Assembly: GCF_006345805.1 (NCBI RefSeq)
Contig: NC_043021.1
Span: 4,402,001-4,466,000, forward strand
Length of the DNA: 64,000 nt
Reading direction: 5' to 3'
Source of the DNA: Octopus sinensis
Lineage: Eukaryota
The notes beneath the pieces were generated by a model that was not told where the DNA came from, made no database searches, and saw only the letters and a list, made by a program, of their open reading frames with translations. The stretch's first letter is position 1; each line of letters begins with the position of its first letter. Shown in pieces: positions 10,115 to 39,970 of the stretch. Position numbers and translations under genes: made by a program.

Positions 10115-10360
10115 CTCAAATGAAGATGAGGCAGAAGACTCAGACAGAAGGTTCCCCCAAATGAAAAGGTCCTCGGTCGGATCAAGCTGGGAGATGCTTT
10201 TCCAGCTCGGAGGGTAATCCTCGATTTCCGAGACATCGTCCGTTGTGTCTAACTGTGACACATCATCAGCTGTGAGATCATTTTCGGTCCCTTCCACTTC
10301 TTCCTCCTCTTCTTCCACTAGCTCCCTTATAGGTGGAAGAACATAGCGCTGGTACTCCAT
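10115..10360 (-). CDS. Candidate alternative first coding exon of the minus-strand gene (82 aa acidic N-terminus MEYQRYVLPPIRELVEEEEEE...SSSFE)
   Basis: ATG at 10360; 246 nt of non-repetitive, protein-like ORF; ends GAG|GTAAGA (phase 0). Upstream 10360-11560 is repeat-poor and has no clear acceptor. Confidence 0.65.
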
Positions 10361-11579
10361 CTATTCCTTACGTTTATTCATTCATTTATTTATTTATTTA
10401 TTTATTTACAGTGACATCACGAACAACAACGAAACACAACAGGAAAAGGAACACGAAAAATTCCGAGTTGAACCCATCGCAAATAGTTTCAGAAAAGGAA
10501 AGAAAAAGAAATAAATATCCAAGACAGAACCATGAAGACATCTTGTTGCTGGTATGTAACTCGTCGTTAAATAGGGTGTACATCATTTTGTGTATATGTA
10601 TATGTGTGTATATATAATTTTTTGTTGTTATTTTTCCTTTTGTTTGCAGGCTGTTTATAATTTAAATAAACCAGGCCCAACAAATTTAACAATGACGACA
10701 ACAACAGTGATGAAATATTTAACAAGTACACAACTACCCTTACTTACATGTACAAATGAAAATTACCAAGATACATAATTAGGTTGCATTTTTTTTTTGT
10801 TTTTTAGTATCATTAGCCATCTTTTTTTTTATATGTGTCTTTGTTTTCTTTTTAATTACTTTCCAAACGATAACAGGCTCATTTATTCAGATCCACATAT
10901 TGAATAAATCACGGTAGCTTTTTGATGTTTATAGTACTGTCGGTTTCTGTTGGCATTTGTTTGTTTGTTTATCTATTTATTTAAAATTTATTTTGTTTTC
11001 TTCTACGTCTGAAGTCATGACAGGTTAGCATCAAATAAGTGAAAACAGAATTCATACAAAGGTAATACAAATATATTTATGAGTCCCAACACAGATTAAA
11101 AGGTAATATAATTGTATTATGTGAGGGAGGGGGGGAATGTATGAAATAAAATAATAAAAAAAAGTATCTAAAAAAAAAAAATACATGCTTTCGCAATGTA
11201 AATATAGTGCAAGTCATTTAGATGGAAGCTAAAATATATAGAAAAATAAATAGGATTATCTTCACTAACTAAGAGATAAGGATTAAGACAATATATGCAA
11301 GTAGGCTAAACACAATATCGGATGAAAAAAAAAATGCATTCGTTTTTACATTATTTAGTTCTAACTATTATATGTAGGGCCATACTGGAGCACTGCTTTG
11401 CACATTGAAACTCCCTGATCTACAACACTGAAGAGACAATGGTCTTTTAGTTGGGGGTTTTCAGTATGATGTTGGTTTCTCTTGGTGATAAATTAGGTTG
11501 GATACTTTTAACCCTAAGTGTCTGACAGATCAGAACTGACATAAGATTAAATAACAACAAAAACAATCTCTATATATAA

Positions 11580-11978
11580 TCTTTATATATAAAAGTGAAG
11601 TTGTGTGTCTGTCTCCTACGATTTAGATTCCTAACTACTCCCACATTTTGCAGTGCAGTGTAACCAAAAGCGGATATCTTATAGTCGTGATTCATATCGA
11701 GCCCTTCTGGGTATTAGTGCGCGTCTACGATGAGTCTACGATTTTAAAAAAAATTTACCATAATTTTTTCCCATTTTTAATGCATTTTTTTGCTATTATA
11801 TAAGGGAAGTAACTCTCTAAAAATGTATTATTAAATCTCAGAACGTAAAAAGCTACAGTAACACCCCCCCCCCTTTGTGTTTAGCCATATTGAGATGGCT
11901 ATTATACTTTACATCTCTAAAAATGCTTATATAGTTATTTCCCTTACAAACCCGAGCAACGCCGGGCAATACTGCTAG
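11580..11978 (+). mobile_element. Non-autonomous Helitron
   Basis: A|TC 5' end (TCTTTATATATAAAAG); subterminal hairpin CCCG-AGCAACGC-CGGG; CTAG|T 3' end. The 3' part is shared with 54550-54930. Confidence 0.8.
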
Positions 11979-12454
11979 TCTTTTATATTTTACTTGTTTC
12001 AGTTAGACTGTGGCCATGCTGGGGCACTGCCTTGAAGAATTTTTAGTCAAATGAATCAACCCCAGTACTTATTTTTTTATAAAGCCTGGTACTTATTCTA
12101 TTGGTCCCCTTTGCCAATCTGTTAAGTTACAGGGACATAAACAAAGCAACACCGATTATCAAGTGGTGGTGGGAGACAAAAACACACACACAGCTTCTTT
12201 CAGTTTCCATCTACAAGACCCATGGGCTTCTTTCAGTTTCCATCTACAAGACCCACTCACAAGGCTTTGGTCAGCCCAAGGCTACAATAGAAGACACCAT
12301 GCAGAAAGACTAAATCCAGAACTATGTGGTTGGAAAGCAAATTTCTTACCACAGCCAAATATTTAAAACTCAATATTTATCAGTAAATTACTAACTAAAT
12401 ATAGCAGCAAATTATGGCATTTAGTAATAAGAATTTAGGATATGTAATATTAAT

Positions 12455-12608
12455 TCCTTCTACTATAGGCACAAGGCCTGAAATGTTGAAGGAGGGTACA
12501 AGTTGATTACATTGACCCAAAGCTCAACTGTTAATTTATCAACACCGAAAGGATGGAAGGCAAAGTCAACCACGGTGGAATTTGAACTTAGAAAACAAAA
12601 CTGAAGGA

Positions 12609-12654
<46 letters not shown>

Positions 12655-13629
12655 TAATAATCATCATCATCATCATTGTTTAACGTCCGTTTTCCATGCT
12701 AGCATGGGTTGGACGGTTCAACTGGGGTCTGGGAAGCCAGAAGGCTGCGCCAGGCCCAGTCTGATCTGGCAGTGTTTCTACAGCTGGATGCCCTTCCTAA
12801 CGCCAACCACTAATAATAATAATAATAATAATAATGGTTTCAGATTTTAGCACAGAACCAGCAATTTAGAGGGTAGGGGAGTAAGCTGATTAAATTGATT
12901 CCAGTGATCAACTGGTACTTATCTACCCCAAAAGGATGAAAAGCAAAGTCAACCTCAACAGAATTTGAACTCTGAACATGAAGACAAAATTCCGTTTAGC
13001 ATTTTGTCAAGCATGACAACAATTCTGCCAGCTCGCCACCTTAATAATAATAATCCTTGCTACTAAAGGCACAGGGCCTGAAATTTTGGGGAAGGGGACT
13101 AGTTGATTACACCAACCCTAGTACACAACTAGTACTTATGTTATTGACCTTGAAAAGATGAAAGGTAAAGTCGACCTCAGCACAATTTGAACTCAGAATG
13201 TAGAGACGAAGGAAATGCCGCTAAGTATTTTGCCCAACATGTTAATAATTCTGTCAGCTCAACATAATCATCATCATCGTTTAACATCTGCTTTCCATGC
13301 TGGCATGGGTTGGACGGTTCGACTGGGGTCTGGGAAGCGAGGAGGCTGCGCCAGGCCCAGTCTGATCTGGCAGTGTTTCTACAGCTGGATGCCCTTCCTA
13401 ACGCCAACCACTCCACGAGTGTAGTGGGTGCTTTTAATGTGCCACTGGCACGGTGCCAGGCGAGGCTGGCAACGGCCACGATCGGTTAGTGCTTTTTACG
13501 TGCCACTGGCATGGAGGCCAGTCGGGGCAGCGGCCACATTCGGATGGTTCTTTTACGTGCCACCGGCACGGGTGTCACAACTACAATTTCCATTGACTTT
13601 TGAGCGACGACAACGACAACAACAACAAC

Positions 13630-13675
<46 letters not shown>
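12455..13675 (-). repeat. Chain of old B-like and family C SINEs separated by (TAA)n/(CAT)n tails
   Basis: Alternating B-like and C segments, each beginning at a trinucleotide tail. Confidence 0.75.
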
Positions 13676-13678
<3 letters not shown>

Positions 13679-14146
13679 CTCAGGGAGAGGAATAAGTGTA
13701 GCAAGGGAAAAAATGGTGTCAGAATAAAATAATTAGCAGTTAGAATAAAAAAAATTGTTGACTGTCTTTCTTGATGTTGTAGACAGAAAAGCTGACTTGA
13801 AGAAAAAAAAAAGTAAAATATTTCAAGAACAAAAGCAAATAGAAAGTGATACACGAAAAAAAAATCTGACTAAAACTAAGATGACTAATGAGTGTAAAAA
13901 CTGAACAATCAATACTTATCTCTTTACTAAGAGAAAGAGAGAGACAGACAAAGAAGCAGAGAGAGAGATAAATATTGATGTGGTTAGTTTATAATGTAAA
14001 CATTGTCATGAAACTATTTATAAGATTATGGTCAAAGGAAGTACAGTAATAGAGCAGTAAATCCAAGAGGCTGATTGGTTGGTTACATATTTATTGCAAG
14101 TAATACCCCCCCTCCCATTTAAAAAAACTAAAATACAAACTTATAT

Positions 14147-14545
14147 ATTACTCTTTTACTCTTTTACTTGTTTCAGTCATTTGACTGCGGCCATGCTGGA
14201 GCACCGCCTTTAGTCGAGCAAATCGACCCCGGAACTTATTCTTTGTAAGCCCAGTACTTATTCTATCGGTCTCTTATACCGAACCGCTAAGTGATGGGGA
14301 CGTAAACACACCAGCATCGGTTGTGAAGCAATGCTAGGGGGACAAACATACATACATACACATATACATATACATATACACGACAGGCTTCTTTTCAGTT
14401 TCCGTCTACCAAATCCACTCACAAGACATTGGTCGGCCCGGGGCTATAGCAGAAGACACTTGCCCAAGGTGCCACGCAGTGGGACTGAACCCGGAACCAT
14501 GTGGTTGGTTAGCAAGCTACCTACCACACAACCACTCCTGCGCCT
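14147..14545 (-). mobile_element. SINE family A, full length
   Basis: Matches the A consensus seen in the window. Confidence 0.9.
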
Positions 14546-14687
14546 ATTCATTCACTTTGTACACAAGTTAGCATGGGTTAGATGAGTACATATTTTTGAA
14601 GCATTGTTTTACAACCAGATGCCCTTCATGTTGCTAACTCTTTTTTTTTTTTTTGAACATGGGTTGATTACTTCAACCCCACTGCTC

Positions 14688-14867
14688 TTCGTCTGCCGTT
14701 ACGTTGTGAGTTCAAATTCCGCCAAGGTCGACTTTACCTTTCATCCTTTCGGGGATCGATAAATTAAGTACCAGTTACGCACTGGGGTCGATGTAATCGA
14801 CTTAATACCTATGTCTGTCCTTGTTTGTCCCCTCTATGTTTAGCCCCTTGTGGGCAATAAAGAAATA
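14688..14867 (+). mobile_element. SINE family B, 5'-truncated at TTCGTCTG, inserted into an older opposite-strand B-like copy
   Basis: B body and tail; the host sequence continues on either side. Confidence 0.8.
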
Positions 14868-15075
14868 GGTATATATTTTATTAACTCAGGAAGGATGAAT
14901 GGTAAAACTGACCTCAGCAGAAGTTGAACTCAGAATGTAAAGACAGATGAAATGCTACAAATGCCCAGCATGCAAACAACTCTGACGAGCTTGCCACCTT
15001 TTTCTATACTAATGCTGATTAATGCATCAGATTTGAAATAATTGTGATTTTGTTTTTTTTAACACTTTGATCCCT

Positions 15076-15405
15076 GAGCCGGTGGCACGTAAAAAGCACC
15101 ATCTGAACGTGGCCGATGCCAGCGCCGCCTTGACTGGCTTCCGTGCCGGTGGCACGTAAAAAGCACCATCTGAATCGTGGCCGATGCCAGTGCCGCCTTG
15201 ACTGGCTTCCGTGCTGGTGGCACGTAAAAACCACCCACTACACTCACAGAGTGGTTGGCGTTAAGAAGGGCATCCAGCTGTAGAAACACTGCCAGATCAG
15301 ACTGGAGTCTGGTGTAGCCTTCTGGCTTCCCAGATCCCCAGTCGAACCGTCCAACCCATGCTAGCATGGAGAACAGACGTTAAACGATGATGATGATGAT
15401 GATGA
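15076..15405 (+). mobile_element. Family C element with three tandem internal modules
   Basis: GCCGGTGGCACGTAAAAAGCACCATCTGAA...CTTGACTGGCTTCCGT is repeated before the tail. Confidence 0.8.
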
Positions 15406-15923
15406 TTCATACAACTATAAAAATATCTGAACTTATAAAACTCAGCTACTCTTGCTGGCATAGGACTGCCAATTCTAAAATACTAAATAAACTAAAATAT
15501 AAATCATTATCACGAAACTTTCATTGTATGTATGGTGGTTTGAGAAACAGGGACACTGCATCCCTGTGTGTTGTAAAGGGAGACTCAGAAGGGTGAGTGA
15601 CAGGAAAGGCATCTGGCCATTAAAAAACCCATTCAGCATATAAAAACAGATGTAAAATAATGATGAGAATGACGATTACTGAATGAATGTATTAATTTCT
15701 TTCACACTTTTCCAAAAAGACCAAGTGAATAAATATATTATTAGCAAAATAACATAAACCAGAAAGTGCTTGGACAGTGCTGTCCACCATCCGCAAGACT
15801 AGACAGGCTGGTGCCACTAATTCAAAACCACAAACTGGTCAATGAAAAATGTCAGACCTCTCCCAAATCACACCCTCCCCTCTTCGCTTAAAAAAAAAAG
15901 TAAAGAATATAAGAATATACATT

Positions 15924-16650
15924 GAGTGGCTTAGTGGTTAAGGCATTCGGCTGACAATCGTAAGGTCAAGAGTTCGATTCCCAGCAGTGTATTGTGTCCT
16001 TGAGCAAGACACTTTATTTCGTGTTGCTCCGGTTTCCTCGGCTGTCAAAAATGTGTTGTACCTATATTTCTAAGAGCCATCTTTGTCACATTTTGTGTCA
16101 CACTGAATCTCCTTGAGAACTTCATTAAGAGTACACAGGCGCAGGAGTGGCTGTGTGGTAAGTAGCTTGCTAAACAAACACATGGTTCCGGGTTCAGTCC
16201 CACTGCGTGGCATCTTGGGCAAGTGTCTTCTTCTATAGGCCTGGGCCGACCAATGCCTTGTGAGTGGATTTGGTAGACGGAAACTGAAAGAAGCCTGTCG
16301 TATATATGTATATATATATATATATGTATGTGTGTGTCTGTGTTTGTCCCCCTAGCATTGCTTGACAACCGATGCTGGTGTGTTTACGTCCCCGTCACTT
16401 AGCGGTTCGGCAAAAGAGACCGATAGAATAAGTACAGGGCTTACAAAAAGAATAAATCCCGGGGTCGAGTTGCTTGATTAAAGGCGGTGCTCCAGCATGG
16501 CCGCAGTCAGATGACTGAAACAAGTAAAAGAGTAAAAGAGAGTAAAGAGTATGTCTATGGAGTGCTCAGCCATGTGTACATTCATTTCACATGCAGGCTG
16601 TTCCGTTAATCAAGTCAACTGGAACATTAATTTTCGTAACCAACAGAGTG
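15924..16650 (+). mobile_element. Older tRNA-derived SINE (D-like 3' end) interrupted by a family A copy
   Basis: Head GGCTTAGTGGTTAAGGC...GTTCGATTCCC. The body breaks at ...ATTAAGAGTACAC and resumes TGTCTATGGAGTGCTCAGCC, as in family D (GTTAAGGGTACACGTGTCTGTGGAGTGCTCAGCC). Confidence 0.7.
16137..16551 (+). mobile_element. SINE family A, full length (nested)
   Basis: AGGCGCAGGAGTGGCTGTGTGG head to (AAAAGAGT)n tail. Confidence 0.9.
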
Positions 16651-17303
16651 TCAGTATTTGATGCAATCATAGATGAAGGTGCATGGCTCAGTGGTTAGAG
16701 CATCAAGCTCATAATCATGAGGTAGTGAGTTCGAATCCCAGACTAGGCTGTGTGTTGTGTTCTTCAGCAAGACACTTTATTTCAAGTTGCTCCAGTTCAC
16801 TTAGCTGTCAAATGAGTTGTGGTGTCACTGGTGCCAAGCTGTATCAGAGTTTACCTTGGCACAAGTGCCAGTAAGGCGACACTGGTAACAATCATACTCG
16901 AATGGTGCTTTTTATGTGCCACCGGCATGGAAGCCAGTCAGCTGCTCTGGCAACGATCACACTTGGATGGTGGTCTTAGCGCTCCACTAGCATGGATGCC
17001 AGTCATCGAATTTGATTTTGATTTCGATTCATTTACTGAAATAGCTCATATCCACCGTGTTGTATCTCATGATTTCAACATACCCTGGCTGGGTGGTTAC
17101 ATGCTAGCTCACCCAATATCTGGGATCCTTGGATAACATCAGCAGCATGGAGAGGAAAGGCTGGTATGCATGGACAACTGCTTGTCTTTCATTAACGACC
17201 TTGCCCAGACTTGTGCCTCAGAGGGGAACTTTCTAGGTGCAATCCTATGGTCATTCATGACCGAAAGGGGTTTTTACTCTTTAGCCATAGATTTACACAA
17301 AGA

Positions 17304-17690
17304 CTGTGGAGGCGCAATGGCCCAGTGGTTAGGGCAGCGGACTCGCGGTCGTAGGATCGCGGTTTCGATTCCCAGACCGGGCGTTGTGAGTGTTTATTGA
17401 GCGAAAACACCTAAAAAGCTCCACGAGGCTCCGGCAGGGATGGTGGTGATCCCTGCTGTACTCTTTCACCACAACTTTCTCTCACTCTTACTTCCTGTTT
17501 CTGTTGTACCTGTATTTCAAAGGGCCGGCCTTGTCACTCTCTGTGTCACGCTGAATATCCCCGAGAACTACGTTAAGGGTACACGTGTCTGTGGAGTGCT
17601 CAGCCACTTACACGTTAATTTGACGAGCAGGCTGTTCCGTTGATCGGATCAACCGGAACCCTCGTCGTCGTAACCGACGGAGTGCTTCCA
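17304..17690 (+). mobile_element. SINE family D (tRNA-derived head, possibly Arg-related; CpG-rich, young)
   Basis: Head GGAGGCGCAATGGCCCAGTGGTTAGGGC...GGTTTCGATTCCC with A/B boxes. Near-identical copies at 36638 and 57389. Confidence 0.9.
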
Positions 17691-17986
17691 TAATCCACAC
17701 TAAGACCGAAAGAGAAAAAGACATGATAGTCATAACTTGAGTGTCTTGGATCATAGGACAGATCAGGGGCCAAATACCAGCCAAAGATGGACAGAAGAAA
17801 TTCCAGTCACAAGAAAGTGGTGTCATACAAATGGACCAAGAAGAAGTTGCAGGACCAATGAATGAACACGTGGTATTTAAAATCTGTAATTGGGGTTTTT
17901 CAAGAGGGAGTAGCAGAAGCAGCAGCCTTACTCTTCATTTGATTCTGGTAATTCAAGTAACACTTCTTGTCTATTGAATAAGTATA

Positions 17987-18405
17987 CACTGGCGAAAACA
18001 AAATTGAAGACCAATGATAAAAGTTCTATTTCTTACAAAATATTTTGTTACTAACACCATACAAACTATTTTTATCGTTTAGACCTTATGCAGAATTTAT
18101 TTTTCTTTCGAATGATGCAGACAATAACTATTTTTATACAACTTGAAGAATTCTAATGCTAAATTAATATAAACGTTTCAAATTTACCGGCAAAATTAGT
18201 CTAAGACTGTATCATTATAATTTTATTTAAAGCTTAAGATTGTAGCAAAAATGAGCAACAAGAATGAAATACATATTAGTACTTTGTGCCATAGCCTTCA
18301 TTCTTAATAACTAGGGAACAACGCCTCGGCATTGAATTTGCTAAGTGATTACAAAATTCTATGGGAATGTTTTGCCATATTTTCACCAGTGTAGATCTGA
18401 TATAA
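17987..18405 (-). mobile_element. Tc1-family DNA transposon, 3' end remnant
   Basis: Minus strand reads ...KIWQNIPIEFCNHLANSMPRRCSLVIKNEGYGTKY*, a typical Tc1 transposase C-terminus. TA|CACTGG TIR-like end at 17985. Confidence 0.75.
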
Positions 18406-19351
18406 AGGCAGACAGTTCTTTTATCTTTTACTGTTTCAGTCATTAGACTACGGCCACGCTGGAGCACTGCCTTGAAGCGTCTTTAGTCAAATGAATCAAC
18501 CCCAAGACTTATTTATTTTTTAAAAGCCTGGTGCTTATTGTATTGATCTCATTTGCCAAACCACTAAGTTACAGGGAAGTAAACACACCAACACCAATTG
18601 TCAAGTGGTGGTGGAGGACAAACACAGACACACACACACGCACAGATAAATGTATATATACAATAGGCATTTTTAAGTTTCCATCTACCAAATCCACTTA
18701 TAATGTTTTGGTTGGCCTGGGGCTATAGTAGAAGACACTTGCCCACACGATTTGCAAGACATTGATGATCAGCTTCATGAACATTTCACTGAAGCAAAAA
18801 ATGAACTCGAAAACTTGTGGGCCTTACAAATCAATTTAAGTACACACAGCAGCAATGTTTTGAAACTGACCTATTTTCCATTACATTTCAGACTGATTCA
18901 TCACCGAGTTGCTGAAGCAGAAATATCATTATAGTAAATGTTCTGCTCAATACCACAGATTTACTTGTCAGTTGCTTAACTGCAACCACTTGAGCATGGC
19001 CCTTAGTGGCTGACAATATGTGTATCTCTGATGATGAGCAGAACTAGTGGGGGAGCATCATAACCATATGTTGAGAGGGATTATTTGGGGTTTGAATAAA
19101 TGTAAGAAATGCAAAGTTTGAAGGAAATATTAGCCAATTTTCAAACTTTCTAGGGGTCAGCAAATAGGAAATAACAGTTGCTACCCAAGGACAAAATATC
19201 ATGTTATGCAGTGAATCTTGTAGTTGATAGTGAACATGCTCCTGATAACAATCATTGCCCCTGATATCAGTTATCTTGTACCCTAATGGTCTGGCCACTT
19301 AGAAATCTGAACAGGTTTCTAAGAAACAGCTGAATTATGATGAGCAACACT

Positions 19352-19758
19352 TTACTCTCTACTCTTTTGCTCTTTTACTTGTTTCAGTCATTTGACTGTG
19401 GCCATGCTGGAGCACCGCCTTTAGTCGAGCAACTCGACCCCGGGACTTATTCTTTGTAAGCCCAGTACTTATTCTATCGGTCTCTTTTTGCCGAACCACT
19501 AAGTGACGGGGACGTAAACAGACCAGCATCGGTTGTCAAGCAATGCTAGGGGGACACACACAGACATACACACATACATATATATACATATATACGACAG
19601 GCTTCTTTCAGTTTTCATCTACCAAATCCACTCACAAGACATTGGTCGGCCCGGGGCTATAGCAGAAGACACTTGCCCAAGATGCCACGCAGTGGGACTG
19701 AACCCGGAACCATGTGGTTGGTTAGCAAGCTACTTACCACACAGCCACTCCTGCGCCT
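19352..19758 (-). mobile_element. SINE family A, full length
   Basis: Matches the A consensus; lies head-to-head with an older A copy at 19792-20155. Confidence 0.9.
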
Positions 19759-19791
19759 TTGATGGTAATCTATAAATAATCCATGCATAAA

Positions 19792-20155
19792 GTAGGCACA
19801 AGTGCAGCTATGTGGCAAGAAGTGTGCTTCCCAGCCATATGGTTTCAGGTTCAGTCCCACTGCATGGCACTTTGGGCAAGTGTCTTCTACTATAACCATA
19901 GGCTGACCAAAGCGCCTTGAGTGGATTTGGTAGACAAACTGAAAGAAGCTTGTTGTATATGTGTGTTTTTGTGTGTGTTTGACAACCAGTGAGGGTTTGT
20001 TTGTGTCCCTGTAACTTAGCCGTTCAGCAAAATAGTCCAACTGAATGAGTAACAGGTTAAAAAGAAATAAGTACTGAGGTCAATTCGTTCGACTAAAAAT
20101 TCTTCAAGGAAGTGCCCCAGCATGGCCACAGTCTAATGACTGAAACAAGATAAAA
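19792..20155 (+). mobile_element. Older family A-type SINE
   Basis: Diverged head, body and tail of family A. Confidence 0.75.
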
Positions 20156-20653
20156 GTACTGTAACTTAAAACACGAGGAGAACATAATAAGGAAAGCAGG
20201 CATCGGTGTCGGGAAGTGCATCTGACCATAGAAACTTCTGCCCTGACATAATCTCAATCCACCCATGCCAGCACAGAAAAGTTGGTGTTAAAATAATAAC
20301 AACCTTGATGATGATGATGATGATGATGATGAAGTCATGGTGATGATTATGTCAATAAACTGGGAGAATAAAGCAGTGCTTGCATCAAATTAACAGATGA
20401 ATTAATTAATTATTTTGAGATTAAACATAACTGCCATCAGCTGAGTTTCACAAAACGATATGAATTATAATAGTCTTAAAACAAAGTGACCAAGCACGAT
20501 TGCATCATTTGCTTCCATGTCCAGTGATGCAAAAACCAATTACTGGGACACATTCACAACCAAGCAGACCGGAGTCCAGAGGTATTTATATCCCCACTCA
20601 TTTATTAACGACATCGCTAAAATCTATAACGAATAACAAAAGGATTCACTTAC

Positions 20654-20731
20654 CACGTTAGGTCTATGGCAATGTTTACATATCCCTGGGTCAACTGTGT
20701 ACGTTGACCTCCTCTTTAAAGCAGAACTCAT
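20654..20731 (-). CDS. Candidate alternative first coding exon of the minus-strand gene (MSSALKRRSTYTVDPGICKHCHRPNV)
   Basis: ATG at 20731; 78 nt; ends GTG|GTAAGT, a consensus donor in phase 0. Lies in a ~1.9-kb repeat-free block (about 20400-22290). Too short for the ORF track. Confidence 0.55.
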
Positions 20732-23905: not shown

Positions 23906-23914
23906 GCGACCCAT

Positions 23915-23950
<36 letters not shown>

Positions 23951-23966
23951 TGTGTGTATGTGTGTG

Positions 23967-23998
<32 letters not shown>

Positions 23999-26911: not shown

Positions 26912-26927
26912 TATTATTTTATTTAAA

Positions 26928-28908: not shown

Positions 28909-28956
<48 letters not shown>

Positions 28957-30191: not shown

Positions 30192-30505
30192 ATCATCATC
30201 ATCATCGTCGTTTAGCGTCCGCTTTGCATGCTAGCATGGGTTGGACGGTTCAACTGGGGTCTGGGAAGCTAGAAGGCTGCACCAGGCCCAGTCTGATCTG
30301 GCAATGTTTCTACAGCTGGATGCCCTTCCTAACGCCAACCACTTCGTGAGTGTAGTTGGTGCTTTATACGTGGGCAAACGGCCACGATCGGATGGTGCCT
30401 TTTATGTGCCACCGGCACAGGGGCCAGGCAGGGCTGGCAACGGCCATGAATGGATGGTTCTCTTACGTGCCACCGGCACTGGTATCTCAGCTGCAATTTC
30501 CATTG
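30192..30505 (-). mobile_element. Family C element
   Basis: (CAT)n plus family C body and internal modules. Confidence 0.8.
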
Positions 30506-30726
30506 ATATATATATATATATATATATGCAGCATGGGTGTGTGGTAAGAAGCTTGCTTCCCAACCACATGATTCCAGGTTCAGTCCTACTGCATGGCACC
30601 TTGAGCCAGTGCCTTCTACAATGGCCTCAGGCTGACCAAAACCTTGTGAGTAGATTTGATAGAAACTGAAAGAAGCCAATTGTGTGTGTGTGCGTGCGTG
30701 CGTGTGTCAGGTTTCTTTCAGTTTCT

Positions 30727-30924
30727 TATTTCTTTACTGCCCACATGGGGCCATACACAGAGGGGGCAAACAAGGACCGACAACCGGATTAAGTCGATTA
30801 TATCGACCCCAGTGTGTAACTGGTACTTATTTCCTTGGCAGAATTTGAACTCAGAATGTAGCAGCAGACGAAATACCGCTAAGCATTTCGCCTGGTGTGC
30901 TAACGTTTCTGCCAGCGCACCGCC
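30727..30924 (-). mobile_element. Family B SINE (internally deleted) inserted in an old A-type head
   Basis: 15-bp TSD TTTCTTTCAGTTTCT at 30712-30726 and 30925-30939. Confidence 0.85.
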
Positions 30925-32610
30925 TTTCTTTCAGTTTCTATCTACCAAATTAACTTACAATGCTTTGGTCAGCCCAAGGCTATATATGAAGACACTTGTC
31001 CAAGATGCCACACTGTATGATTGAACCTTGGATCATGTGGTTTGGAAGCAAACTTCTTATCACGCAGCCATGCCTATGACATGCACAACATTCTTCTAAG
31101 CGAAAATGACTGTTTACATTTATAAAAACTAAGTCTATCTTGCAATAATGCCAGCTTTCAATCTGACAAGTCCATACACTTCAGGCATTTGAATATACAA
31201 GCCCATTTTTAGGGATATATTTTCTGTGCATACTGGAAAATTTAACTGAGGAAATTTTTAACAGGACTTTTGAGTTATAATTACAATACTGAAGTTGTCT
31301 CCCTTGATTTTTGTAAATTTTAACAAAATTTTTCTGTCTTGGGAGGATCTGAAGCTAACCCGAAGTAGAAAAGGCATGTCATTGCAGAGGTCATAAATAC
31401 AATGAAAGTAATTTGATAAGCATAACTGATTGACTGATTAATTGAATAATTTATTCAAAGAATAGATTAGTTGACCAATTGATGAATAATAAAGAAGTGT
31501 GCACTTCTTGTTATTGGCATAATGACCCATCAAAGATACAACAAAATCTGTTTCGATATAGGAGCTCACAGCAAGAATATTATAAATCAAATAAGGTGGT
31601 GAGCTGGTAGAATCATTAGCATGCCAGACAAAATGCTTAGCGGCATTTCATCCATCTTTGTGTTCTGAGTTCAAATCCTGCCAAAGTCAACTTCGCCTTT
31701 CATCCTTTCAGGGGCAATAAAATATGTACCAGTTGAGCACCAGGATTGATGTAATCGACTTACACCCACTGCAAAATTGCTGGCCTTGTGCCAAAATTTG
31801 AAATCAGTATTCAAACCAAATACCAATAATTTGAACTTCTTATTTTACTACAACAAGCATACAGTGCCCACTTTACAATTTACTACTTTATAGAATTGTA
31901 TAGTATTGTTTCTGAATTTCATCTTCTTGAGGCTAATATAAATAGCAATAAATGTAGTCAAATGAATGCAATTTTTCTGAATGCTAAAATTTGGTTTACC
32001 CTGAACCGTGGCTCTCATTATATTGGTGGACTCCTTAATCTGTCTTAAATCGGTTTTAACAACCTCACTAACACTGGTGTCATGAAAAAATATATCCAAT
32101 ACACTTGAGTGGATCTGGTTAGATGGAAACTAAGGAATTACAATCTGTGTGTGTGTGTCCTTGTCTTGATATCACATGTTAGTTGTAAACAACTATTGTT
32201 CGTTACCAATCCTCTGTGGAAAATATGTTTGGCCATGGGGAAATATTACCTTGCTTGGAAAAAGGCAAGGTTAGCAACAGGAAGGGCAGCCAGCTGTAGA
32301 AAATCTGTTTCAATGAATTTCATCTGATCCATGTTAAGCATGGAAAAATGGAAGTTAAAACAGTGATGATGATGGTTTCTTAAATAAAAAGCACCCACTA
32401 CACTCATGGAGTGGTTGGCGTTAGGAAGGGCATCCAGCTGTAGAAACATGTAAAATATGTTACTGGTTTTTAGTAGTAAGTTGTAGCAGGGCATTAATTA
32501 CATTCATATGACTGTAGCAAGCACAGGCATGGCTGCATGGTAAGAAGTTTGCTTCCCAATCACATGGTTGTAGGTTCAGAGATACACACATTCATATATA
32601 TATATATATA

Positions 32611-32790
32611 CAAAATAAGAAAATGGAGGAATAGATTTCTTTCTATCATCAACTTCCAGATAATACCAATTCATATAATTTATTAACTAGTTCCTATTTA
32701 ATCTAAGTAATTAGTTAATAAATTATATGAATTGGTATTATCTGGAAGTTGATGATTGAAAGAAATCTATTCCTCCGTTTTCTAATTTTG
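32611..32790. mobile_element. Palindromic MITE with TA flanks
   Basis: ~80-bp arms CAAAATAAGAAAATGGAGGAATAG...ATTAACTA and TAGTTAAT...CTATTCCTCCGTTTTCTAATTTTG; ~22-bp spacer. Confidence 0.85.
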
Positions 32791-32966
32791 TATTATGAAT
32801 TTGAAGTAAGACATTTTACCTTCGCCCATATAATACAATAAATGAATTAATTGCATTGCAATTCTAAGCATTTATGTATTAGTCTTCTGGGTACTTTACT
32901 GGCAGTATATTGGATAAATGATATCCCATAGTGGGTTACACCCATAACCCCTATCTCACTTTGTAC

Positions 32967-32997
<31 letters not shown>

Positions 32998-33654
32998 TAT
33001 ATAATGGCTTTCTTTCAGTTTCCCTCTCCCAAATTCACTCAAATGGCATTCGCTTGTGTCGGTGCTATAGTAAAAGACACTTGCCCAAGTGTCCAGTGGA
33101 GCTGAACCCGAAACCACGTTGTCGACAAGCGAGCTTCTTAACCACAGCTGGCAAAAATCAATAAAAGAGAGAAAGTAAGAATTTGTGATGATAGCAAAAG
33201 AAACTGAAAGACATAGGGTTATGTAAGGGAAGTAACTCTAGCAATGCTGTTGCAATGCCTTCTTGACATAAGCGAAGAGCTACAAAGGAAAGGATTTCTA
33301 AAATATTAAGCAAACCATCAGGTTAACCAGTAGGTAGAGACCGGCACCAGAATCAGTGAACCATCAATTTTTTGTTATTAATACTAACTATTCCTTTATA
33401 AATAAATAATAAAAAGTGGTAATTGAGCCAATTTTAATTACAGGTAATTAAAGGAAATAGAGCAACTGATCTAAAAGAGAAAATTTAATGTACACACAGA
33501 CACAGACAGGAGACGTTTAAATAGCTGCAGAATTGAAAAACTTTATATTTTTTACTTGTTTCAGTGGATTGGACAGTAGTCGTGCTAGGGTACTGCTTTG
33601 AAGGATTTTAGACAAACAAATCAACCCCACTATTTATTTTTCACAATCTCTACT

Positions 33655-34048
33655 CAGTGGCTGTGTGGTAAGTAGCTTGTTTACCAACCACATGGTTGTG
33701 GGTTCAGTCCCACTGCGTGGCACCCCTTGGGCAAGTGTCTTCTGCTATAGCCTCGGGCCGACCAATGCCTTGTGAGTGGATTTGGTAGACGGAAACTGAA
33801 AGAAGCCTGTCGTATATATGTATATGTATGTGTATGTTTGTGTGTCTGTGTTTGTCCCCCTAGCATTGCTTGACAACCGATGCTGGTGTGTTTACATCCC
33901 CGTCACTTAGCGGTTTGGCAAAAGAGACCGATAGAATAAGTACTGGGCATACAAAGAATAAATCCCAGGGGTCGATTTGCTCGACTAAAGTCGGTTCTCC
34001 AGCATGGCCACAGTCAAATGACTGAAACAAGTAAAAGAGTAAAGAGTA
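33655..34048 (+). mobile_element. SINE family A
   Basis: Matches the A consensus. Confidence 0.9.
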
Positions 34049-34604
34049 TAGAGAAAAGGCCAATAGGATGTATTTAGAAATCAGATATGCCAGAGACACA
34101 ACCCTTTCTGTGCTAAAAAACAGTAACATTTTCTGTCTTAAACAAAATTATCAAAAACTGTCAATGGAACAATATGCAATGAATTTGAAAATTTACTTGG
34201 ATAATGTGATTTGCAAGACAGATGTAAACCTGATTTTGATCATGCATTAGGTGACTTGGTGTGAGGTCCTCAGCCATAATAGTTGTAAAAGTATTATTGT
34301 ATCATATAAATTATGGAACTCGGGAAATGCTTGTTTTTCTTTTGTAAAATCAAATTAAATTATTCTGTTTATTCCACATCAAATTCATGTTCAATCACCT
34401 CAAAAACATATATGGAGACATATTATATGACATTTTTGGTAAAAGCTACTGATTTTGTTAAAAAAATTGTGTATTTTGGCTGCCATCTTAGATTTCTGCC
34501 TTATTGGAAAATCAAATTGCAAAATTAATACTATTTTTGGATTCAGAATATTAATAAACACATGCTAAGCTAAAATACTATATAAAGTTAATCCAAACAA
34601 GAAA

Positions 34605-34785
34605 TAACAAAAAAACACAACAACGCGAGGACGTGGAACAAATATGGTATTATTGGACGCTCAGAAAAGAAGGAGGGTTTAATGTTTCGAGCGGAGCTCT
34701 TCGTCGGAAACATAGGAGAAGTAAAGATCCAGAGAAGGGAAGACAGAGGAAAAAAAAAATCACCAACGGTACACACACAGTCATA
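34605..34785 (-). mobile_element. Possible Penelope-like element terminus with a hammerhead-like motif
   Basis: Minus strand CCGACGA-A-GAGC-TCC-GCTC-GAAAC at 34683-34707; same architecture as 24844-24870. Confidence 0.4.
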
Positions 34786-35245
34786 TTATATTTACATACA
34801 CTATGGGGCTTTAAATAGATTAAATTAGTATTTACCCCTATGTTGGGGTGGGGTGGGGGTTCAAACTTCAAGGGATATGTACAGGGAGTTGCCCCTCACA
34901 CCTACCCTACAATGTTATTCTCTCTGTGTCCATAGTCTTGCAAGCTGCATGGTAACCTCAATGGTGCTGGTGGCCAAAAAAGAAAAAAAAAGACCATCCA
35001 GTTACACACTGTAAAGTGGTGGGCATTAGGAAGGACATCCAATCATGGAACCAATCACATCGCCGAAATCTCAAAGCTACAAGAGAATGTATGATAAATT
35101 CAAAACAATGTGAATAAAGGGTTAAATTTCATTTTAATTTATATTCCAAACACCAGCTTAGTAATGGCAATGGAATTACACTAAATTCCTTATTCTTTAT
35201 TCTTTAAAATTTACTCCAAGGGCAGAGTATTTCACAGCAGTATCA

Positions 35246-35526
35246 CCAGAGCGTCGGCTGCGGGGTCACTCCGAAAAGCTCGAACTGCAACGATTTCATC
35301 TCAATCGAAGGAGAGGGGGCTTTCTCCGTCTGGGTTGCGGATCCGTGGAATAAGCTGCCGGACGAGATAGTGAAGATGCCGACGACCGCTCGGTTCAAAG
35401 TCTCTCTTGTCCAGAAATGGCCTGAACTCTTTGCGTGAACACCCTCCCTGTACATAACTCCATGTCCCCCTAAATGGCCTTGCTTTTTGCTTTTTGAGCC
35501 AAAAAATTAACTTAACTTAACTTAAC
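35246..35526 (+). mobile_element. CR1-clade LINE 3' end (same family as 22371-22854)
   Basis: Nearly identical to 22582-22854; (TTAAC)n tail. Confidence 0.9.
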
Positions 35527-36022
35527 AAAAGGGTTAGCTGAGATTTCATATTACAGTTTTCTGAAGGACATGAAGATGTGAGGACACCTATAACTTACTC
35601 CATAATGTCACAAGGAATCTTGTCAACATTAAGCAATTACTCTAAGAACAATATATAATTGCAATTATCAGGATTCCTTAAGTAATCATTCACGGAGATA
35701 TATAGAGGAACATCAATCATTTGATAATTATGCAATGACTATTATTTTCAGAATTAATGTCATGTGTAATTAGTGTGGTGTAGTAATTTGTTATTAAGTA
35801 TTGATTAATCCACTCACCTTCCCTTCTACATATCCACCGCACAACAATGTTAACAAAGGAGATCTCAAAGTGGTCATCAAATCTGCTAGAAATAACAGCC
35901 AAATTTCCTGAAAAAGCTTCTACATAGTCACTCAACCTGCTAGAAATAACAGTAATATCCCCACTAACATTACACTCTTCTCATTTAAAAAAAATGCATT
36001 GGCTAGTGTTAGACAGCATACT

Positions 36023-36410
36023 GGGAGTGGCTGTGTGGTAAGTAGCTTGTTTACTGACCACATGGTTCCGGGTTCAGTCCCACTGCGTGGCACCTTGGGC
36101 AAGTGTCTTCTACTATATCCTCGGGCCGACCAAGGCCTTGTGAGTGGATTTGGTAGACGGAAACTGAAAGAAGCCTGTCGTATATATATATATATGTATG
36201 TATGTGTTTGTGTGTCTGTGTTTGTCCCCCTAGCATTGCTTGACAACCGATGCTGGTGTGTTTATGTGCCCATTACTTAGCGGTTCGGCAAAAGACACCG
36301 ATAGAATAAGTACTGAGCTTACAAAAGAATAAGTCCCAGGGTCGAGTTGCTCGATTAAAGGTGGTGCTCCAGCATGGCCGCAGTCAAATGACTGAAACAA
36401 GTAAAAGAGT
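36023..36410 (+). mobile_element. SINE family A
   Basis: Matches the A consensus. Confidence 0.9.
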
Positions 36411-36637
36411 ATAGCTGGAATCCCTTTGATCATAGATTGGCTTAATCAAAACTGGCCTAGGGTTAAACAGCAAAAGCTATCAAGTACTTTCAGACAGATC
36501 CCATTTAGCCTTACATTATTCATCTTCGTTATTTCACTTGGATTGAGATAAAGGATATATAATAGCAATGAAGACAATACTAATACAAATTATAGTTTCT
36601 TTACTAAAACAGGAAGCCTGAGCTATCTTCTTCAAGA

Positions 36638-37013
36638 TGGATGGAAGCACTCCGTCGGTTACGATGATGAGGGTTCCGGTTGATCCGAATCCACGGAACA
36701 GTCTGCTCGTGAAATTAACGTGTAAGTGGCTGAGCACTCCACAGACATGGGCACCCTTAACGAAGTTCTCGGGGATATTCAGCGTGACACAGAGAGTGAC
36801 AAGGCTGGCCCTTTGAAATACAGGTACAACAGAAACAGGAAGTAAGAGTGAGAGAGAAAGTTGTGGTGAAAGAGTACAGCAGGGATCACCACCATCCCCT
36901 GCCGGAGTGTTTTCGCTCAATAAACACTCACAACGCCCGGTCTGGGAATCGAAACCGCGATCCTATGACCGCGAGTCCGCTGCCCTAACCACTGGGCCAT
37001 TGTGCCTCCACAG
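36638..37013 (-). mobile_element. SINE family D with TSD
   Basis: Reverse complement of the 17304 copy; TSD CTTCTTCAAGA at 36627-36637 and 37014-37024; (TCCA)n tail. Confidence 0.9.
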
Positions 37014-37585
37014 CTTCTTCAAGAACAATAGATAGAATCAGTGATCAGAATGTCGAAAACATTAGAAGATACCCTGGAACAGGATTTTTCACATAAAGGC
37101 TATTGAATGATAATGTTTAGAAGATGTTATTCTGTTTTTCATAATAATAATAATCCTTTCTATTAAAGGCACAAGGCCTGAAATTTGGTGGGAGGGGGTT
37201 AGTTAATTACATAGGCCCCCAGTGTTTCACTGGTACCTAATTTATCGACCCCCAAAAGAATGAAAGGCAAAGTCAACCTTGACGGAATTTGAACTCAGAA
37301 CGGAGGGAAGGGCAAAATACCGCTAAGCATTTTGTCCGGCATGCTAACGATTCTGCCAGATAATAATAACTTCAGATTTCGGCACAAGACCAGCACTTTT
37401 TGAGGGGAGGGGGAAGTCAATAACATTGACCCTAGTGATCAGCTGGTACTTATTTAATCAACCCGAAAGGATGAAAGACAAAGCTGGCCTCGGTGGAATT
37501 TGAATCCAGAGTGTAAAGACAGATGAACTGCCATAAAGCATTTGGTCTGGATGCTAATGATTCTATCAGGGTGCCATCTTTAATG

Positions 37586-38032
37586 TCCCTGGGCATGGAC
37601 ACTCCGACGTCTGGCAGCTGACTTGGCAGACACCCATAAAATTATTAACCATCTAACAAACAATAACTCTGAGCACCTTTTCAAACTCCACCCGTCTAAC
37701 AGCCACGGACATATTTACAAAGTCAGAAAACAGCACAGCTCCCATGACTTTCAGAAACATTTTTTCACGCTGAGAGTTGCTGAAGCATGGAACAAACTGC
37801 CGGCATCAGTTGTTAGTTGTCGGAGCACTGCATCCTTCAAAACTTCCATGCTTCCTGAGATTCGCCAACACTACACCTGATTTTCTCCCCTCCATACACA
37901 CACAAGCATGTATCTGACTCATACATTGTTCGCTTTCCAGACATTTGTACATTACTGCATATGCTTTATACACACCTTCTGACAAGTTGTGGTGCACCTG
38001 AGCACTGTATACAATAATTTCATTATTATTTA
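37586..38032 (+). mobile_element. CR1-clade LINE 3' end (same family as 1011-1755)
   Basis: Highly similar to 1308-1755; reads ...AEAWNKLPASVVSC. Confidence 0.9.
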
Positions 38033-38625
38033 TTTTCATGATAATGGTTCCAAATTTTGGCACAAGGCCAGCAGGTTTGGTGGGGAGGGGTAAGTCAATG
38101 TCATATCTCCCCCAATATTCAACTGGTACTTATTTTACTTTATAGCATAAAAAAAAATACAAATATGTTTAAAAAGCAGTTTACGATTTTTATAAAACAA
38201 AATATGTTCCTTTTTTTTTTAAATTTGAATTAGAGACAGGCCTGGCTCTGTGGTTAAGAAATTCACTTCACAACTTTATATGGTACTTTATTTTTATTCA
38301 TCTTGGAGATATGAAAGGCAAAGTTGACCTCAGCAAGAAGGGAACTCAATGTAAGGATCTAAAACAAATACTGCATAACATTTTTCTAACATTCTAACAA
38401 TTCTGCCAATCCACAATCCACTGCTTTTATGATTATGATTTCTAACACTAATTTATGACATGACAATAACAATTTGATATACACAAAAGAAAAAACTTGA
38501 ATTTTAAAAAATCATTTTTCACCCCTGGTCACTTTATAATGAAGTTCTCATGAAATCTTTTTTAATCACATGAAAATTTATTTTTGTACTATTCAGGGAT
38601 ATAAAAAATATTAACAAAAATATCA

Positions 38626-39040
38626 GCAGGAGTAGCTGTGTGGTAAGTAGCTTGTTTACCAACCAAATGGTTCCGGGTTCAGTCCCACTGCGTGGCATCT
38701 TGGGCAAGTGTCTTCTGCTATAGCCCCGGGCCAACCAATGCATTGTGAGTGGATTTGCTAGACGGAAACTGAAAGAAGCCTGTCGTATATATGTATATAT
38801 ATATATACATATATGTATATGTGTGAATATGTTCGTGTGTCTGTTGGTTCCCCCAGCATCGCTTGACAACCGATGCTTGTGTGTTTACGTCCCCGTCACT
38901 TAGCAGTTCGGCAAAAGAGACCGATAGAATAAGTACTAGGCTTACAAAGAATAAGTCCTGGGGTCAATTTGCTCGACTAAAGGCGGTGCTCCAGCATGGC
39001 CACAGTCAAATGACTGAAACAAGTAAAAGAGTAAAAGAGA
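38626..39040 (+). mobile_element. SINE family A, ending ~25 bp from the 39066 splice donor
   Basis: Matches the A consensus. Confidence 0.9.
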
Positions 39041-39066
39041 ATAATAAAAATGAAAGAATGACTTAC

Positions 39067-39970
39067 CATTGTTCCACAAGTTCTTGGAGTTTCGCCCACA
39101 GACAGATTTCCAAAACAGTTCGAGCGAGAGCCGAAACTGTGTTCAAGTAAAAACGAATTACTTTTATCTCCAAATATTAATTTTTCAAGACTTTTGAGTT
39201 TCTCTAAATAACGAAGAGAGACAAGCTTATTGCTGCTTTGAAAAATATCCAGAAATTCAGTTTGAATTCTCTCCTTAATATTATTTAACTGTTGCTGATA
39301 TTCATCATTTTCTAAACATTTATTATAATATTGGTCACCGAGAGATTTAATCTGAGACTGTAGAAATTCGATTTCCTTTTTCAAACACTCAATATCCTGT
39401 TTGTATACAGTGTCGAATATTTCAGATTTTTCAAGCTCTAAAGCAATTCGGATGGAGTCTTCTTTCTCAAGAACAAACAATTTTTTCAATTGCTTCACCT
39501 CTTCATCTTTGTATTTCAAGATTTCATTCAGTTCATTATCTTTTTCCTTGCGAAGCCGTTCAATAACCTGATTCAGTTCAAGCTGCTGGTTTTCCAGCAA
39601 CATTCCTTCAAGATCATGTAAGCACTGCCATTTCTCTTTCTCCCAGGTTTGTCTTTTCATATGTAATTCCTTAGACTGAGCTAAACGTAATCTCTGGTTC
39701 CGTTTTCTTTCGGAGTCAATGGATCTTTGTAATTTTCTAATCGTATTGCACATCTGAGGAAGAATTTCCTTACCTAGACACTGTTTTGATTCCAAGCTGA
39801 AGGAACTGGTTAAAATGTGCCTATGCCCCTCATTCAAGTCGAGATCAGCTAACCTTGAATTGGGGCAAACAGACATGTTTGGACTGAGTCTGCTTCTGGG
39901 TACTGGTGATAAACTGTGGACTGACATTGTCGCTTGAACCCTGACAACTGGAGCACAATTGCCTTCATCA
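39067..39970 (-). CDS. Large exon encoding a long coiled coil (JAKMIP-like N-terminal pattern, as seen in invertebrate RIM-binding-protein-like proteins); first in-frame ATG at 39927
   Basis: Acceptor TTCTATTTTTCTCTTTTTAG| at 39971; frame open through the exon (287 codons from ATG); donor ATG|GTAAGT (phase 0). RKLQRSIDSERKRNQRLR...KEKDNELNEILKYKDEEVKQLK resembles the JAKMIP N-terminal pattern from memory; orthology is not established. Confidence 0.85.

What the first reader, a model, noticed from the sequence alone, without database searches (positions are those of the whole stretch)
10115..39970. Three ATG-initiated exons spread over 30 kb all end in phase-0 GTAAG donors: probable alternative N-termini of one gene
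Seen: the exons ending at 39067 (ATG|GTAAGT), 20654 (GTG|GTAAGT) and 10115 (GAG|GTAAGA) are all phase 0. The two lower exons begin with their own ATG, have no obvious acceptor, and sit at the edge of repeat-poor blocks. Inference: alternative promoters put a 287-aa coiled coil, a 26-aa CxxC-containing peptide or an 82-aa acidic peptide onto a shared downstream exon beyond position 1. The 26-aa exon is absent from the ORF track and could be missed by annotation.
Basis: partly seen in the sequence, partly recalled or inferred. Interest (0 to 1): 0.7.

Follow-up and report, generated by a model that had tools for sequence, protein, structure and literature searches.

The report
RIM-binding protein gene: alternative start exon
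The window holds the first coding exon of a synaptic scaffold gene (RIM-binding protein) and, 29 kb further into its huge intron, a second conserved exon with its own start codon that probably gives the protein a different beginning; the third proposed 26-residue exon looks like chance.

Summary

- **Exon A (39970-39067)** is real. It is the N-terminal coiled-coil exon of a RIM-binding protein (RIMBP2/TSPOAP1-like). It is not a first exon: a strong acceptor lies 43 nt before its ATG, and another cephalopod-like contig shows the same layout.
- **No other RIM-BP exon is in the window.**
- **Exon C (10360-10115)** is real. The ORF from its ATG to the GAG|GTAAGAAA donor is conserved (53-55% aa) in three lineages of unnamed, unspliced database contigs. 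Within them it evolves about four times slower than its flanks, with in-frame indels only, and it has no conserved acceptor. It fits an alternative, ATG-initiated 5' exon, but no junction to RIM-BP could be shown. A nested independent gene remains a live rival.
- **Exon B (20731-20654)** has no support. No homologue was found, and comparable ATG-ORF/GTAAG phase-0 sites occur 9 times on this strand and 6 times on the other.

This is an ordinary kind of gene architecture with one apparently cephalopod-specific exon.

The parts
39067..39970 (-). Exon A. This is the first coding exon of a RIM-binding protein gene. It has a 43-nt leader (39970-39928, with an out-of-frame uATG at 39968), then ATG at 39927 and 287 codons: a disordered N-terminus followed by a long helical/coiled-coil region. 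The donor is ATG|GTAAGT, phase 0.
   Evidence: Sequence and translation. Homologue P0001 (E 1.3e-45). A profile search hit N-termini of annotated RIMBP2-like/TSPOAP1-like proteins. Structure model.
39971..39995 (-). 3' splice site of exon A: a polypyrimidine tract plus AG (39972-39971). It implies at least one upstream, probably non-coding, exon.
   Evidence: 98th percentile of AG sites. L001 has the same anatomy, with ttcattctttacag 25 nt before the ATG.
10115..10360 (-). Exon C. An 82-codon acidic ORF that starts at its own ATG (in-frame TAG immediately upstream) and ends GAG|GTAAGAAA, phase 0. It is a conserved coding exon and a candidate alternative 5' coding exon of RIM-BP.
   Evidence: Sequence. 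P0058 cluster (E 1.4e-9 against 5.8e9 proteins; local tblastn E 2.6e-21). Alignments. Exon 1.4% diverged against 5.7-6.3% in the flanks between two sister lineages, with in-frame indels only. No acceptor.
20654..20731 (-). ORF B. 26 codons, MSSALKRRSTYTVDPGICKHCHRPNV, ending GTG|GTAAGT. It is present as described but unsupported as an exon and is probably a chance ORF.
   Evidence: Sequence. Chance baseline. No homologue. Not in L001. Resemblance to RIM-BP N-termini is at chance level.
1..39066 (-). The intron following exon A, at least 39 kb. It runs off the low end of the window, is roughly 40% within-window repeats, and contains ORF B and exon C.
   Evidence: No RIMB1_N, SH3, FN3 or other RIM-BP exon was found by tblastn or profile search of all six frames. 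Repeat map.

Best explanation
The window covers the 5' part of a single RIM-binding protein (RIM-BP; RIMBP2/TSPOAP1-like) gene on the minus strand.

Exon A is its canonical first coding exon. It is spliced to an upstream non-coding exon, starts translation at 39927, and encodes the N-terminal helical region. In Drosophila that region binds BRP/ELKS. A's phase-0 donor joins an exon beyond position 1 that should encode the RIMB1_N domain.

Exon C lies 29 kb into that intron. It is a second, cephalopod-conserved 5' coding exon, most likely transcribed from an internal promoter, because it has its own ATG and no acceptor. I infer that its phase-0 donor joins the same downstream exon. The product would be a RIM-BP isoform in which the 287-residue coiled-coil N-terminus is replaced by an 82-residue acidic peptide.

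ORF B is a chance ORF next to a chance GTAAGT.

Shown: the identity of A, its acceptor, the conservation and boundaries of C, and the absence of other RIM-BP exons. Inferred: the C-to-RIM-BP junction, its promoter, and the non-function of B.
For: Exon A:
- A profile of A plus P0001 finds 57 proteins. Among them are Haliotis, Mytilus, Pecten, chiton, Nematostella and caecilian RIMBP2-like/TSPOAP1-like proteins of 1820-2130 aa, with the match at residues about 45-270.
- Those proteins carry RIMB1_N, SH3 x3, FN3 and Ig_RIMBP2 domains.
- The octopus-type Met lies where molluscan N-termini begin.
- The acceptor and the phase-0 GTAAGT donor recur in L001. The chiton genomic ORF P0002 reads ...NSSK|VSGQ where the annotated P0062 continues ...NSSK|SLHG.

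Exon C:
- Conservation runs exactly from the Met to the donor in contigs L002-L011, and flanking DNA is not alignable to the window.
- Exon divergence is 3/219 against 27/431 upstream and 9/159 downstream, and exon indels are 6 or 3 nt only.
- The acceptor-like AG 20 nt upstream in L002 is CGG in L011, and the window has no acceptor.
- The donor phase equals A's.

Precedent for long and short N-terminal isoforms from one invertebrate RIM-BP gene:
- Ciona Rimbp isoforms A and B (PMC7565545).
- Nematostella isoforms X1 and X4 of one 90% cluster.
- The N-terminal region has a function in Drosophila (PMC7337501).
Against: - No transcript or junction evidence of any kind was available.
- Every database copy of C is unspliced and reads through into VRKHEK.
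- No protein in the 5.8-billion-sequence collection joins a C-like peptide to RIM-BP.
- No C-like ORF from the 143-kb contig carrying the A-like exon is in that collection, although about 62 kb lies downstream of A there.
- C has no similarity to any part of the full-length RIM-BPs held, and nothing outside these unnamed contigs matches it.
- The 300 nt upstream of C's ATG contain several upstream ATGs.
- The test of B was weak. The search tool needs at least 40 aa, so a 46-codon open frame was used.
Confidence: 0.45

Rival explanations
1. C is the first coding exon of an independent, cephalopod-restricted gene nested on the same strand inside the long RIM-BP intron. Its remaining exons lie downstream (below 10115 or beyond position 1), and it never joins RIM-BP exons.
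For: C has its own conserved Met and no acceptor, and it resembles neither RIM-BP nor any Pfam or PDB entry. No database protein links C to RIM-BP. No C-like ORF is on record from the contig that carries the A-like exon.
Against: Same-strand nested genes are uncommon compared with alternative 5' exons in long neuronal genes. The phase-0 donor matches A's. RIM-BP genes of other invertebrates do produce N-terminal variants. No candidate downstream exon or conserved block was found in 1-10114.
Confidence: 0.3
2. One reading: A, B and C are three alternative N-terminal exons, each joined to one shared downstream RIM-BP exon, with B and C driven by their own promoters.
For: All three donors are strong and phase 0. 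B and C each have 1.4-1.9 kb of non-repeated sequence on their upstream side. B's first eight residues resemble the Haliotis RIM-BP N-terminus, MSSALKRR against MNGALQRR.
Against: B-like ATG-ORF/GTAAG phase-0 sites are as common on the opposite strand. B has no homologue and is absent from the 10 kb after the A-like exon in L001. Its match to a profile of molluscan N-termini scores 3.0 bits with E 5.1, rank 6 of 1163 ATG peptides, and the true N-terminus scores lower still, so the test has no power. CpG observed/expected around B is at background.
Confidence: 0.07
3. C has no promoter of its own. It is chosen instead of A by mutually exclusive splicing from a shared non-coding exon 1, or in the octopus it is a cassette exon spliced after A through the AG of the TAG that abuts its ATG, which would be in frame.
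For: In the window, tag|ATGGAG would keep A's frame open. L002 has a good acceptor-like site 20 nt before the ATG.
Against: The window's AG sites before C score in the 9th-13th percentile with no pyrimidine tract. The L002 AG is absent in L011 and weak in L004. In those contigs an in-frame TAA follows that site, so inclusion after A would terminate translation. What is conserved is the Met, not read-through.
Confidence: 0.1

Closest known systems
Ciona robusta Rimbp isoforms A and B (PMC7565545)
   Same: One invertebrate RIM-BP gene gives a long isoform with an N-terminal extension and a shorter isoform that starts inside the gene. The two have different expression domains, and intronic regulatory elements were found.
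   Different: In Ciona the short isoform simply lacks the first 11 exons and was seen as transcripts. Here the proposed alternative exon adds its own 82-residue peptide, and no transcript evidence exists.
Nematostella vectensis TSPOAP1 isoforms X1-X3 against 'RIMS-binding protein 2 isoform X4' (XP_032236491 / XP_048582908)
   Same: These are predicted long (2127 aa, with the coiled-coil N-terminus) and N-terminally short (1592 aa) products of one gene.
   Different: X4 begins at an internal Met of the common sequence with no private coding exon. These are RefSeq predictions.
Drosophila RIM-BP N-terminal region, NTR (PMC7337501)
   Same: It is a conserved alpha-helical/coiled-coil N-terminus. 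Exon A corresponds roughly to the NTR1 part (residues 24-250), which binds BRP and supports scaffold organisation and vesicle recruitment.
   Different: Homology to the fly protein itself was not tested here; this is inferred through the family. That work says nothing of alternative 5' exons.
Vertebrate paralogues TSPOAP1 (RIM-BP1, long N-terminus) and RIMBP2 (short N-terminus)
   Same: Both forms exist: with and without the N-terminal helical region ahead of the SH3-FN3-SH3-SH3 core. A caecilian TSPOAP1 matches exon A's profile.
   Different: Vertebrates achieve this with separate genes (my own knowledge of the family). Here it would be one gene with two 5' exons.

Membership tests
RIM-binding protein (RIMBP2 / TSPOAP1) gene | N-terminal helical/coiled-coil region homologous to that of annotated RIM-BPs | tested here: met
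   The profile of exon A plus P0001 hits residues about 45-270 of Haliotis, Mytilus, Pecten, chiton, Nematostella and caecilian RIM-BPs, with E from 4e-19 to 1.5e-5. tblastn of these proteins back onto the window hits only 39894-39100. A long helix is predicted.
RIM-binding protein (RIMBP2 / TSPOAP1) gene | RIMB1_N domain (PF25566) after the N-terminal region | tested here: inconclusive
   It is present in the homologues. It is not found in any frame of the window, so it must lie beyond position 1 if the gene is intact.
RIM-binding protein (RIMBP2 / TSPOAP1) gene | Three SH3 domains flanking FN3 repeats and the Ig_RIMBP2 domain | not testable with these tools
   These domains lie outside the 64-kb window. 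The window's own proteins are not on record in the contig index.
RIM-binding protein (RIMBP2 / TSPOAP1) gene | First coding exon is one large exon ending in a phase-0 GTAAGT donor (the molluscan gene anatomy seen here) | tested here: met
   Window...GTM|GTAAGT. L001...IV|GTAAGT. The chiton genomic ORF P0002 reads ...NSSK|VSGQ, where annotated P0062 continues ...NSSK|SLHG.
Alternative first exons / alternative promoters of one gene | Each alternative exon lacks a 3' splice site and carries its own transcription start | tested here: inconclusive
   A fails, because it has a strong conserved acceptor. B and C have no credible acceptor. Transcription starts cannot be tested without RNA or CAGE data.
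Alternative first exons / alternative promoters of one gene | All alternative donors join one common downstream acceptor | not testable with these tools
Alternative first exons / alternative promoters of one gene | Reading-frame compatibility of the donors | tested here: met
   All three donors are phase 0. This is expected by chance one time in three for each exon.
Alternative first exons / alternative promoters of one gene | Each exon is a real coding exon (conserved, under purifying selection) | tested here: inconclusive
   Met for A and for C. Not met for B: no homologue was found, but the test was weak.
Independent nested gene in an intron | Own downstream exons and terminator inside or beyond the host intron, never spliced to host exons | not testable with these tools
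   No conserved or recognisable coding block lies downstream of C in 1-10114. There are no transcript data.

The most novel reading that the evidence does not exclude
Coleoid cephalopods have kept, since before octopus-like and squid-like lineages split, a private 5' coding exon in the first long intron of their single RIM-BP gene. It swaps the BRP/ELKS-binding coiled-coil N-terminus for an acidic 75-82-residue peptide with invariant DDVSEIED and TEDLxIWxxLLSES motifs. This would give an active-zone scaffold isoform with different partners from an internal promoter.
Probability: 0.45. Interest if true: 0.45.

Novelty: new member of a known kind. Interest (0 to 1): 0.3.

Why it matters
RIM-BP tethers calcium channels, RIM and, through its N-terminal region, BRP/ELKS at release sites. 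An isoform that replaces that region would be a simple way to build synapses with different scaffold organisation or vesicle recruitment, in animals noted for large nervous systems. Practically, exon C, and exon A's link to a non-coding upstream exon, are things an annotation could miss. Flagging B as probably spurious prevents a false isoform. It is still a routine gene-structure question, not a new mechanism.

Tried and rejected
- **C as part of canonical RIM-BP.** I first thought C's tail (EDLFIWGNLLSESS) resembled the linker (...NLLAS...) after the coiled coil in bivalve RIM-BPs. Profile searches in both directions found nothing, so I rejected this.
- **An upstream coding exon for A.** The frame is open from the acceptor to the ATG in both the window and L001, in the same phase. 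However, the octopus Met sits where other molluscan N-termini start (PRSRLS...NSRLADLDLNEG against RRY..NSRHSLRDEYELDF), so an upstream coding exon is not needed.
- **B as a copy of the RIM-BP N-terminus** (MSSALKRR against MNGALQRR). The profile score is 3.0 bits, E 5.1, and five other ATG peptides in the window score higher. This is chance level.
- **Linking C to A in another species.**
  - The 20-kb locus L001 has no B-like or C-like exon.
  - Metagenome scans with profiles of C and of A found nothing.
  - The window's own ORFs are not in the contig index.
- **A TATA box for C.** TATAAA lies 14 nt before the ATG in L002 and L011. It is too close to the ATG and is not conserved in L004 (TTTAAA) or in the window.
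- **Pfam, PDB and Rfam searches of the pieces.** There were no informative hits for A, B or C or the neighbouring ORFs.
- **CpG observed/expected as a promoter mark.** C's region (0.76-0.78) is no higher than coding exon A (0.74-0.80), and B's is at background (0.55).
Full report
**1. Observation**

On the minus strand the three features are exactly as described.
- The exon ending at 39067 has donor ATG|GTAAGT, the one ending at 20654 has GTG|GTAAGT, and the one ending at 10115 has GAG|GTAAGA.
- The ORFs read 287 aa from the ATG at 39927, 26 aa (MSSALKRRSTYTVDPGICKHCHRPNV), and 82 aa (acidic). All three end in phase 0.
- Each lies in sequence that is not repeated elsewhere in the window: blocks 39048-40017, 20163-22581 and 10068-11746.
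- With a rough consensus matrix of my own, the donors rank in the top 0.3-0.7% of 4054 GT sites on the strand.

The pattern by itself is not rare. ATG ORFs of at least 26 codons that end in a phase-0 GTAAG occur 9 times on the minus strand and 6 times on the plus strand. In non-repeated sequence the counts are 4 and 3. Independent evidence is therefore needed for each exon.

**2. Exon A**

Exon A is not a first exon.
- A pyrimidine tract and AG (39972-39971; 98th percentile of AG sites) precede a 43-nt leader.
- That leader holds an out-of-frame ATG at 39968 that opens a 39-codon uORF overlapping the main start.

A word-indexed search of 5.8 billion proteins found one relative.
- P0001 is a 316-aa ORF on a 143.7-kb contig of an ENA assembly (E 1.3e-45; 50% identity over 224 residues).
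- In that contig (L001) the exon has the same anatomy: ttcattctttacag| lies 25 nt before the ATG, and the donor is GTG|GTAAGT in phase 0.

A profile of the two sequences, run against 1.84 billion representative proteins, found 57 hits.
- The long hits (1822-2126 aa) match at residues about 45-270.
- They are named 'RIMS-binding protein 2-like' or 'peripheral-type benzodiazepine receptor-associated protein 1(-like)' in Haliotis, Mytilus, Pecten, a chiton, Nematostella and a caecilian.
- They carry RIMB1_N, three SH3, FN3 and Ig_RIMBP2 domains.

Further points:
- The octopus-type Met lies where other molluscan N-termini begin.
- The chiton genomic ORF reads ...NSSK|VSGQ where the annotated protein continues ...NSSK|SLHG. 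The large first coding exon with a phase-0 GTAAGT donor is therefore shared across these molluscs.
- The AlphaFold model (two-sequence alignment, mean pLDDT 70) gives a helix over residues 51-167 at pLDDT above 90 for most of its length, more helices to 252, and disordered ends.
- Exon A is the N-terminal region exon of a RIM-BP gene. In Drosophila this region is alpha-helical, binds BRP, and is needed for scaffold organisation and vesicle recruitment (PMC7337501).

**3. The rest of the gene**

- tblastn with all 57 proteins hit nothing in the window except 39894-39100.
- hmmsearch of N-terminal and RIMB1_N profiles against every stop-to-stop fragment of the window also found nothing else.

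**4. Exon C**

The 82-aa peptide found one cluster, P0058 (E 1.4e-9 against the full database; local tblastn E 2.6e-21; 53-55% identity). The cluster is carried by short Logan contigs from at least eight runs that fall into three lineages (L002/L003, L004-L010, L011).

- Similarity starts at the Met (MEYQRY against MESQRF) and runs through DDVSEIED and TEDL(F/M)IW..LLSES.
- It stops at the donor, which is GAG|GTAAGAAA in all of them.
- Flanking DNA is not alignable to the window.
- Between two of the lineages the exon differs at 3 of 219 sites (1.4%), against 27 of 431 upstream and 9 of 159 downstream. The exon has a single 6-nt indel, while the flanks have indels of 1, 4, 8, 12 and 30 nt. The third lineage adds only 3-nt indels.

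This is purifying selection on an ORF that begins with its own Met.

- An in-frame stop lies just upstream in every case: TAG abuts the ATG in the window, and a TAA lies five codons upstream in the other contigs.
- The window has no usable acceptor within 200 nt.
- The acceptor-like AG 20 nt before the ATG in L002 is weak in L004 and is CGG in L011.
- C therefore behaves as a 5'-most coding exon, not as a cassette.
- It has no similarity to any part of the full-length RIM-BPs held, to Pfam, or to PDB sequences.

**5. Does C belong to RIM-BP?**

This could not be shown.
- All database copies are unspliced.
- No protein joins a C-like peptide to anything else.
- The contig with the A-like exon could only be read for 10 kb either side.

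In favour of an alternative RIM-BP N-terminus:
- C is on the same strand.
- It sits in the intron directly after the first coding exon.
- Its donor phase matches A's.
- Invertebrate RIM-BP genes are known or predicted to give long and short N-terminal forms: Ciona isoforms A and B with distinct expression (PMC7565545) and Nematostella X1 against X4.
- Octopus is reported to have the same RIM-BP gene number as Aplysia (PMC9282427).

Against:
- There is no evidence of linkage.
- C is restricted to these unnamed contigs.

I put alternative 5' exon with its own promoter at about 0.45, an independent nested gene at about 0.3, and splicing-only models at about 0.1.

**6. ORF B**

- The search tool's 40-aa minimum meant only a 46-codon open frame could be queried. 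Nothing shares even three 5-residue words with it.
- Nothing similar lies in L001.
- Its first residues resemble the Haliotis RIM-BP start. Against a profile of seven molluscan N-termini it scores 3.0 bits (E 5.1), sixth of 1163 ATG peptides in the window, and the true N-terminus scores lower, so the test has no power.
- A lone CxxC has no partner in RIM-BP.
- With chance sites as frequent on the other strand, B is most likely spurious. I give it about a 10% chance of being real.

**7. Verdict**

- The sequence facts are confirmed.
A is the canonical RIM-BP N-terminal exon but is an internal exon. C is a real, conserved, ATG-initiated exon that plausibly supplies an alternative N-terminus. B is probably chance.
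- The architecture is of a familiar kind. The only new element is an apparently lineage-restricted exon, so interest is modest.
- The tools never named the organism of the window or of the related contigs.

Noticed in passing
window 50000-52000 (boundary); 1-49900 against 50000-63999: There is a sharp compositional switch. CpG observed/expected in non-repeated sequence is 0.35 below about 50 kb and 0.76 above it, going from 0.28 (50-51 kb) to 0.98 (51-52 kb). It may mark the 5' edge of a germline-methylated transcription unit, that is, the start of the RIM-BP gene body.
   Followed up: partly
window 49954-50061, minus strand: A 36-codon ATG ORF ends in AAG|GTAAGG, the best donor score of the four non-repeat candidates, right at the CpG boundary. 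Spliced to exon A it would hit TGA at once, so it could be a non-coding exon 1 with a uORF. This is pure conjecture.
   Followed up: no
window 39851-39968, minus strand: An upstream ATG lies two bases into exon A and opens a 39-codon out-of-frame uORF that overlaps the main start at 39927. The related exon in L001 has no such uATG.
   Followed up: partly
window 10115-10360 (C peptide) and L002-L011: The motif acidic run plus (F/M)IW-x-x-LL (EDLFIWGNLL / EDLMIWEKLL) is invariant across all copies. The W-x-x-L core after acidic residues recalls short linear binding motifs such as LC3-interacting regions. This comes from memory and was not tested.
   Followed up: no
window 15918-15992 (+); 50300-50700 (-): ARAGORN calls a tRNA-Val(GAC)-like element, and two tandem tRNA-like, CpG-rich repeat copies sit at 50.3-50.7 kb. 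These are probably SINE heads rather than tRNA genes. Rfam finds nothing at gathering threshold.
   Followed up: partly
window 23800-24520; 53260-54570; 41240-41600: These are long imperfect microsatellite or low-complexity tracts ((TG)n-like, (TATG/CATA)n-like). They generate the longest 'ORFs' in the window, up to 433 aa of IHTY repeats, which are artefacts of composition.
   Followed up: no
window 1010-1642 (+), 22291-22773 (+), 37623-37880 (+): Three related ORFs share motifs (…LFKLHPSNTRGHIYKVRKQHSS.DF.KHFFTLRVAEAWN…). They look like tails of a retrotransposon protein, and one abuts the upper end of the repeat-free block that holds B. There were no Pfam hits, so the assignment is unverified.
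   Followed up: partly
window 39774, minus strand: An internal GTAAGG (GTCTAG|GTAAGGAA, phase 1) lies 51 codons into exon A. It could be a cryptic or alternative donor, but there is no evidence that it is used.
   Followed up: no
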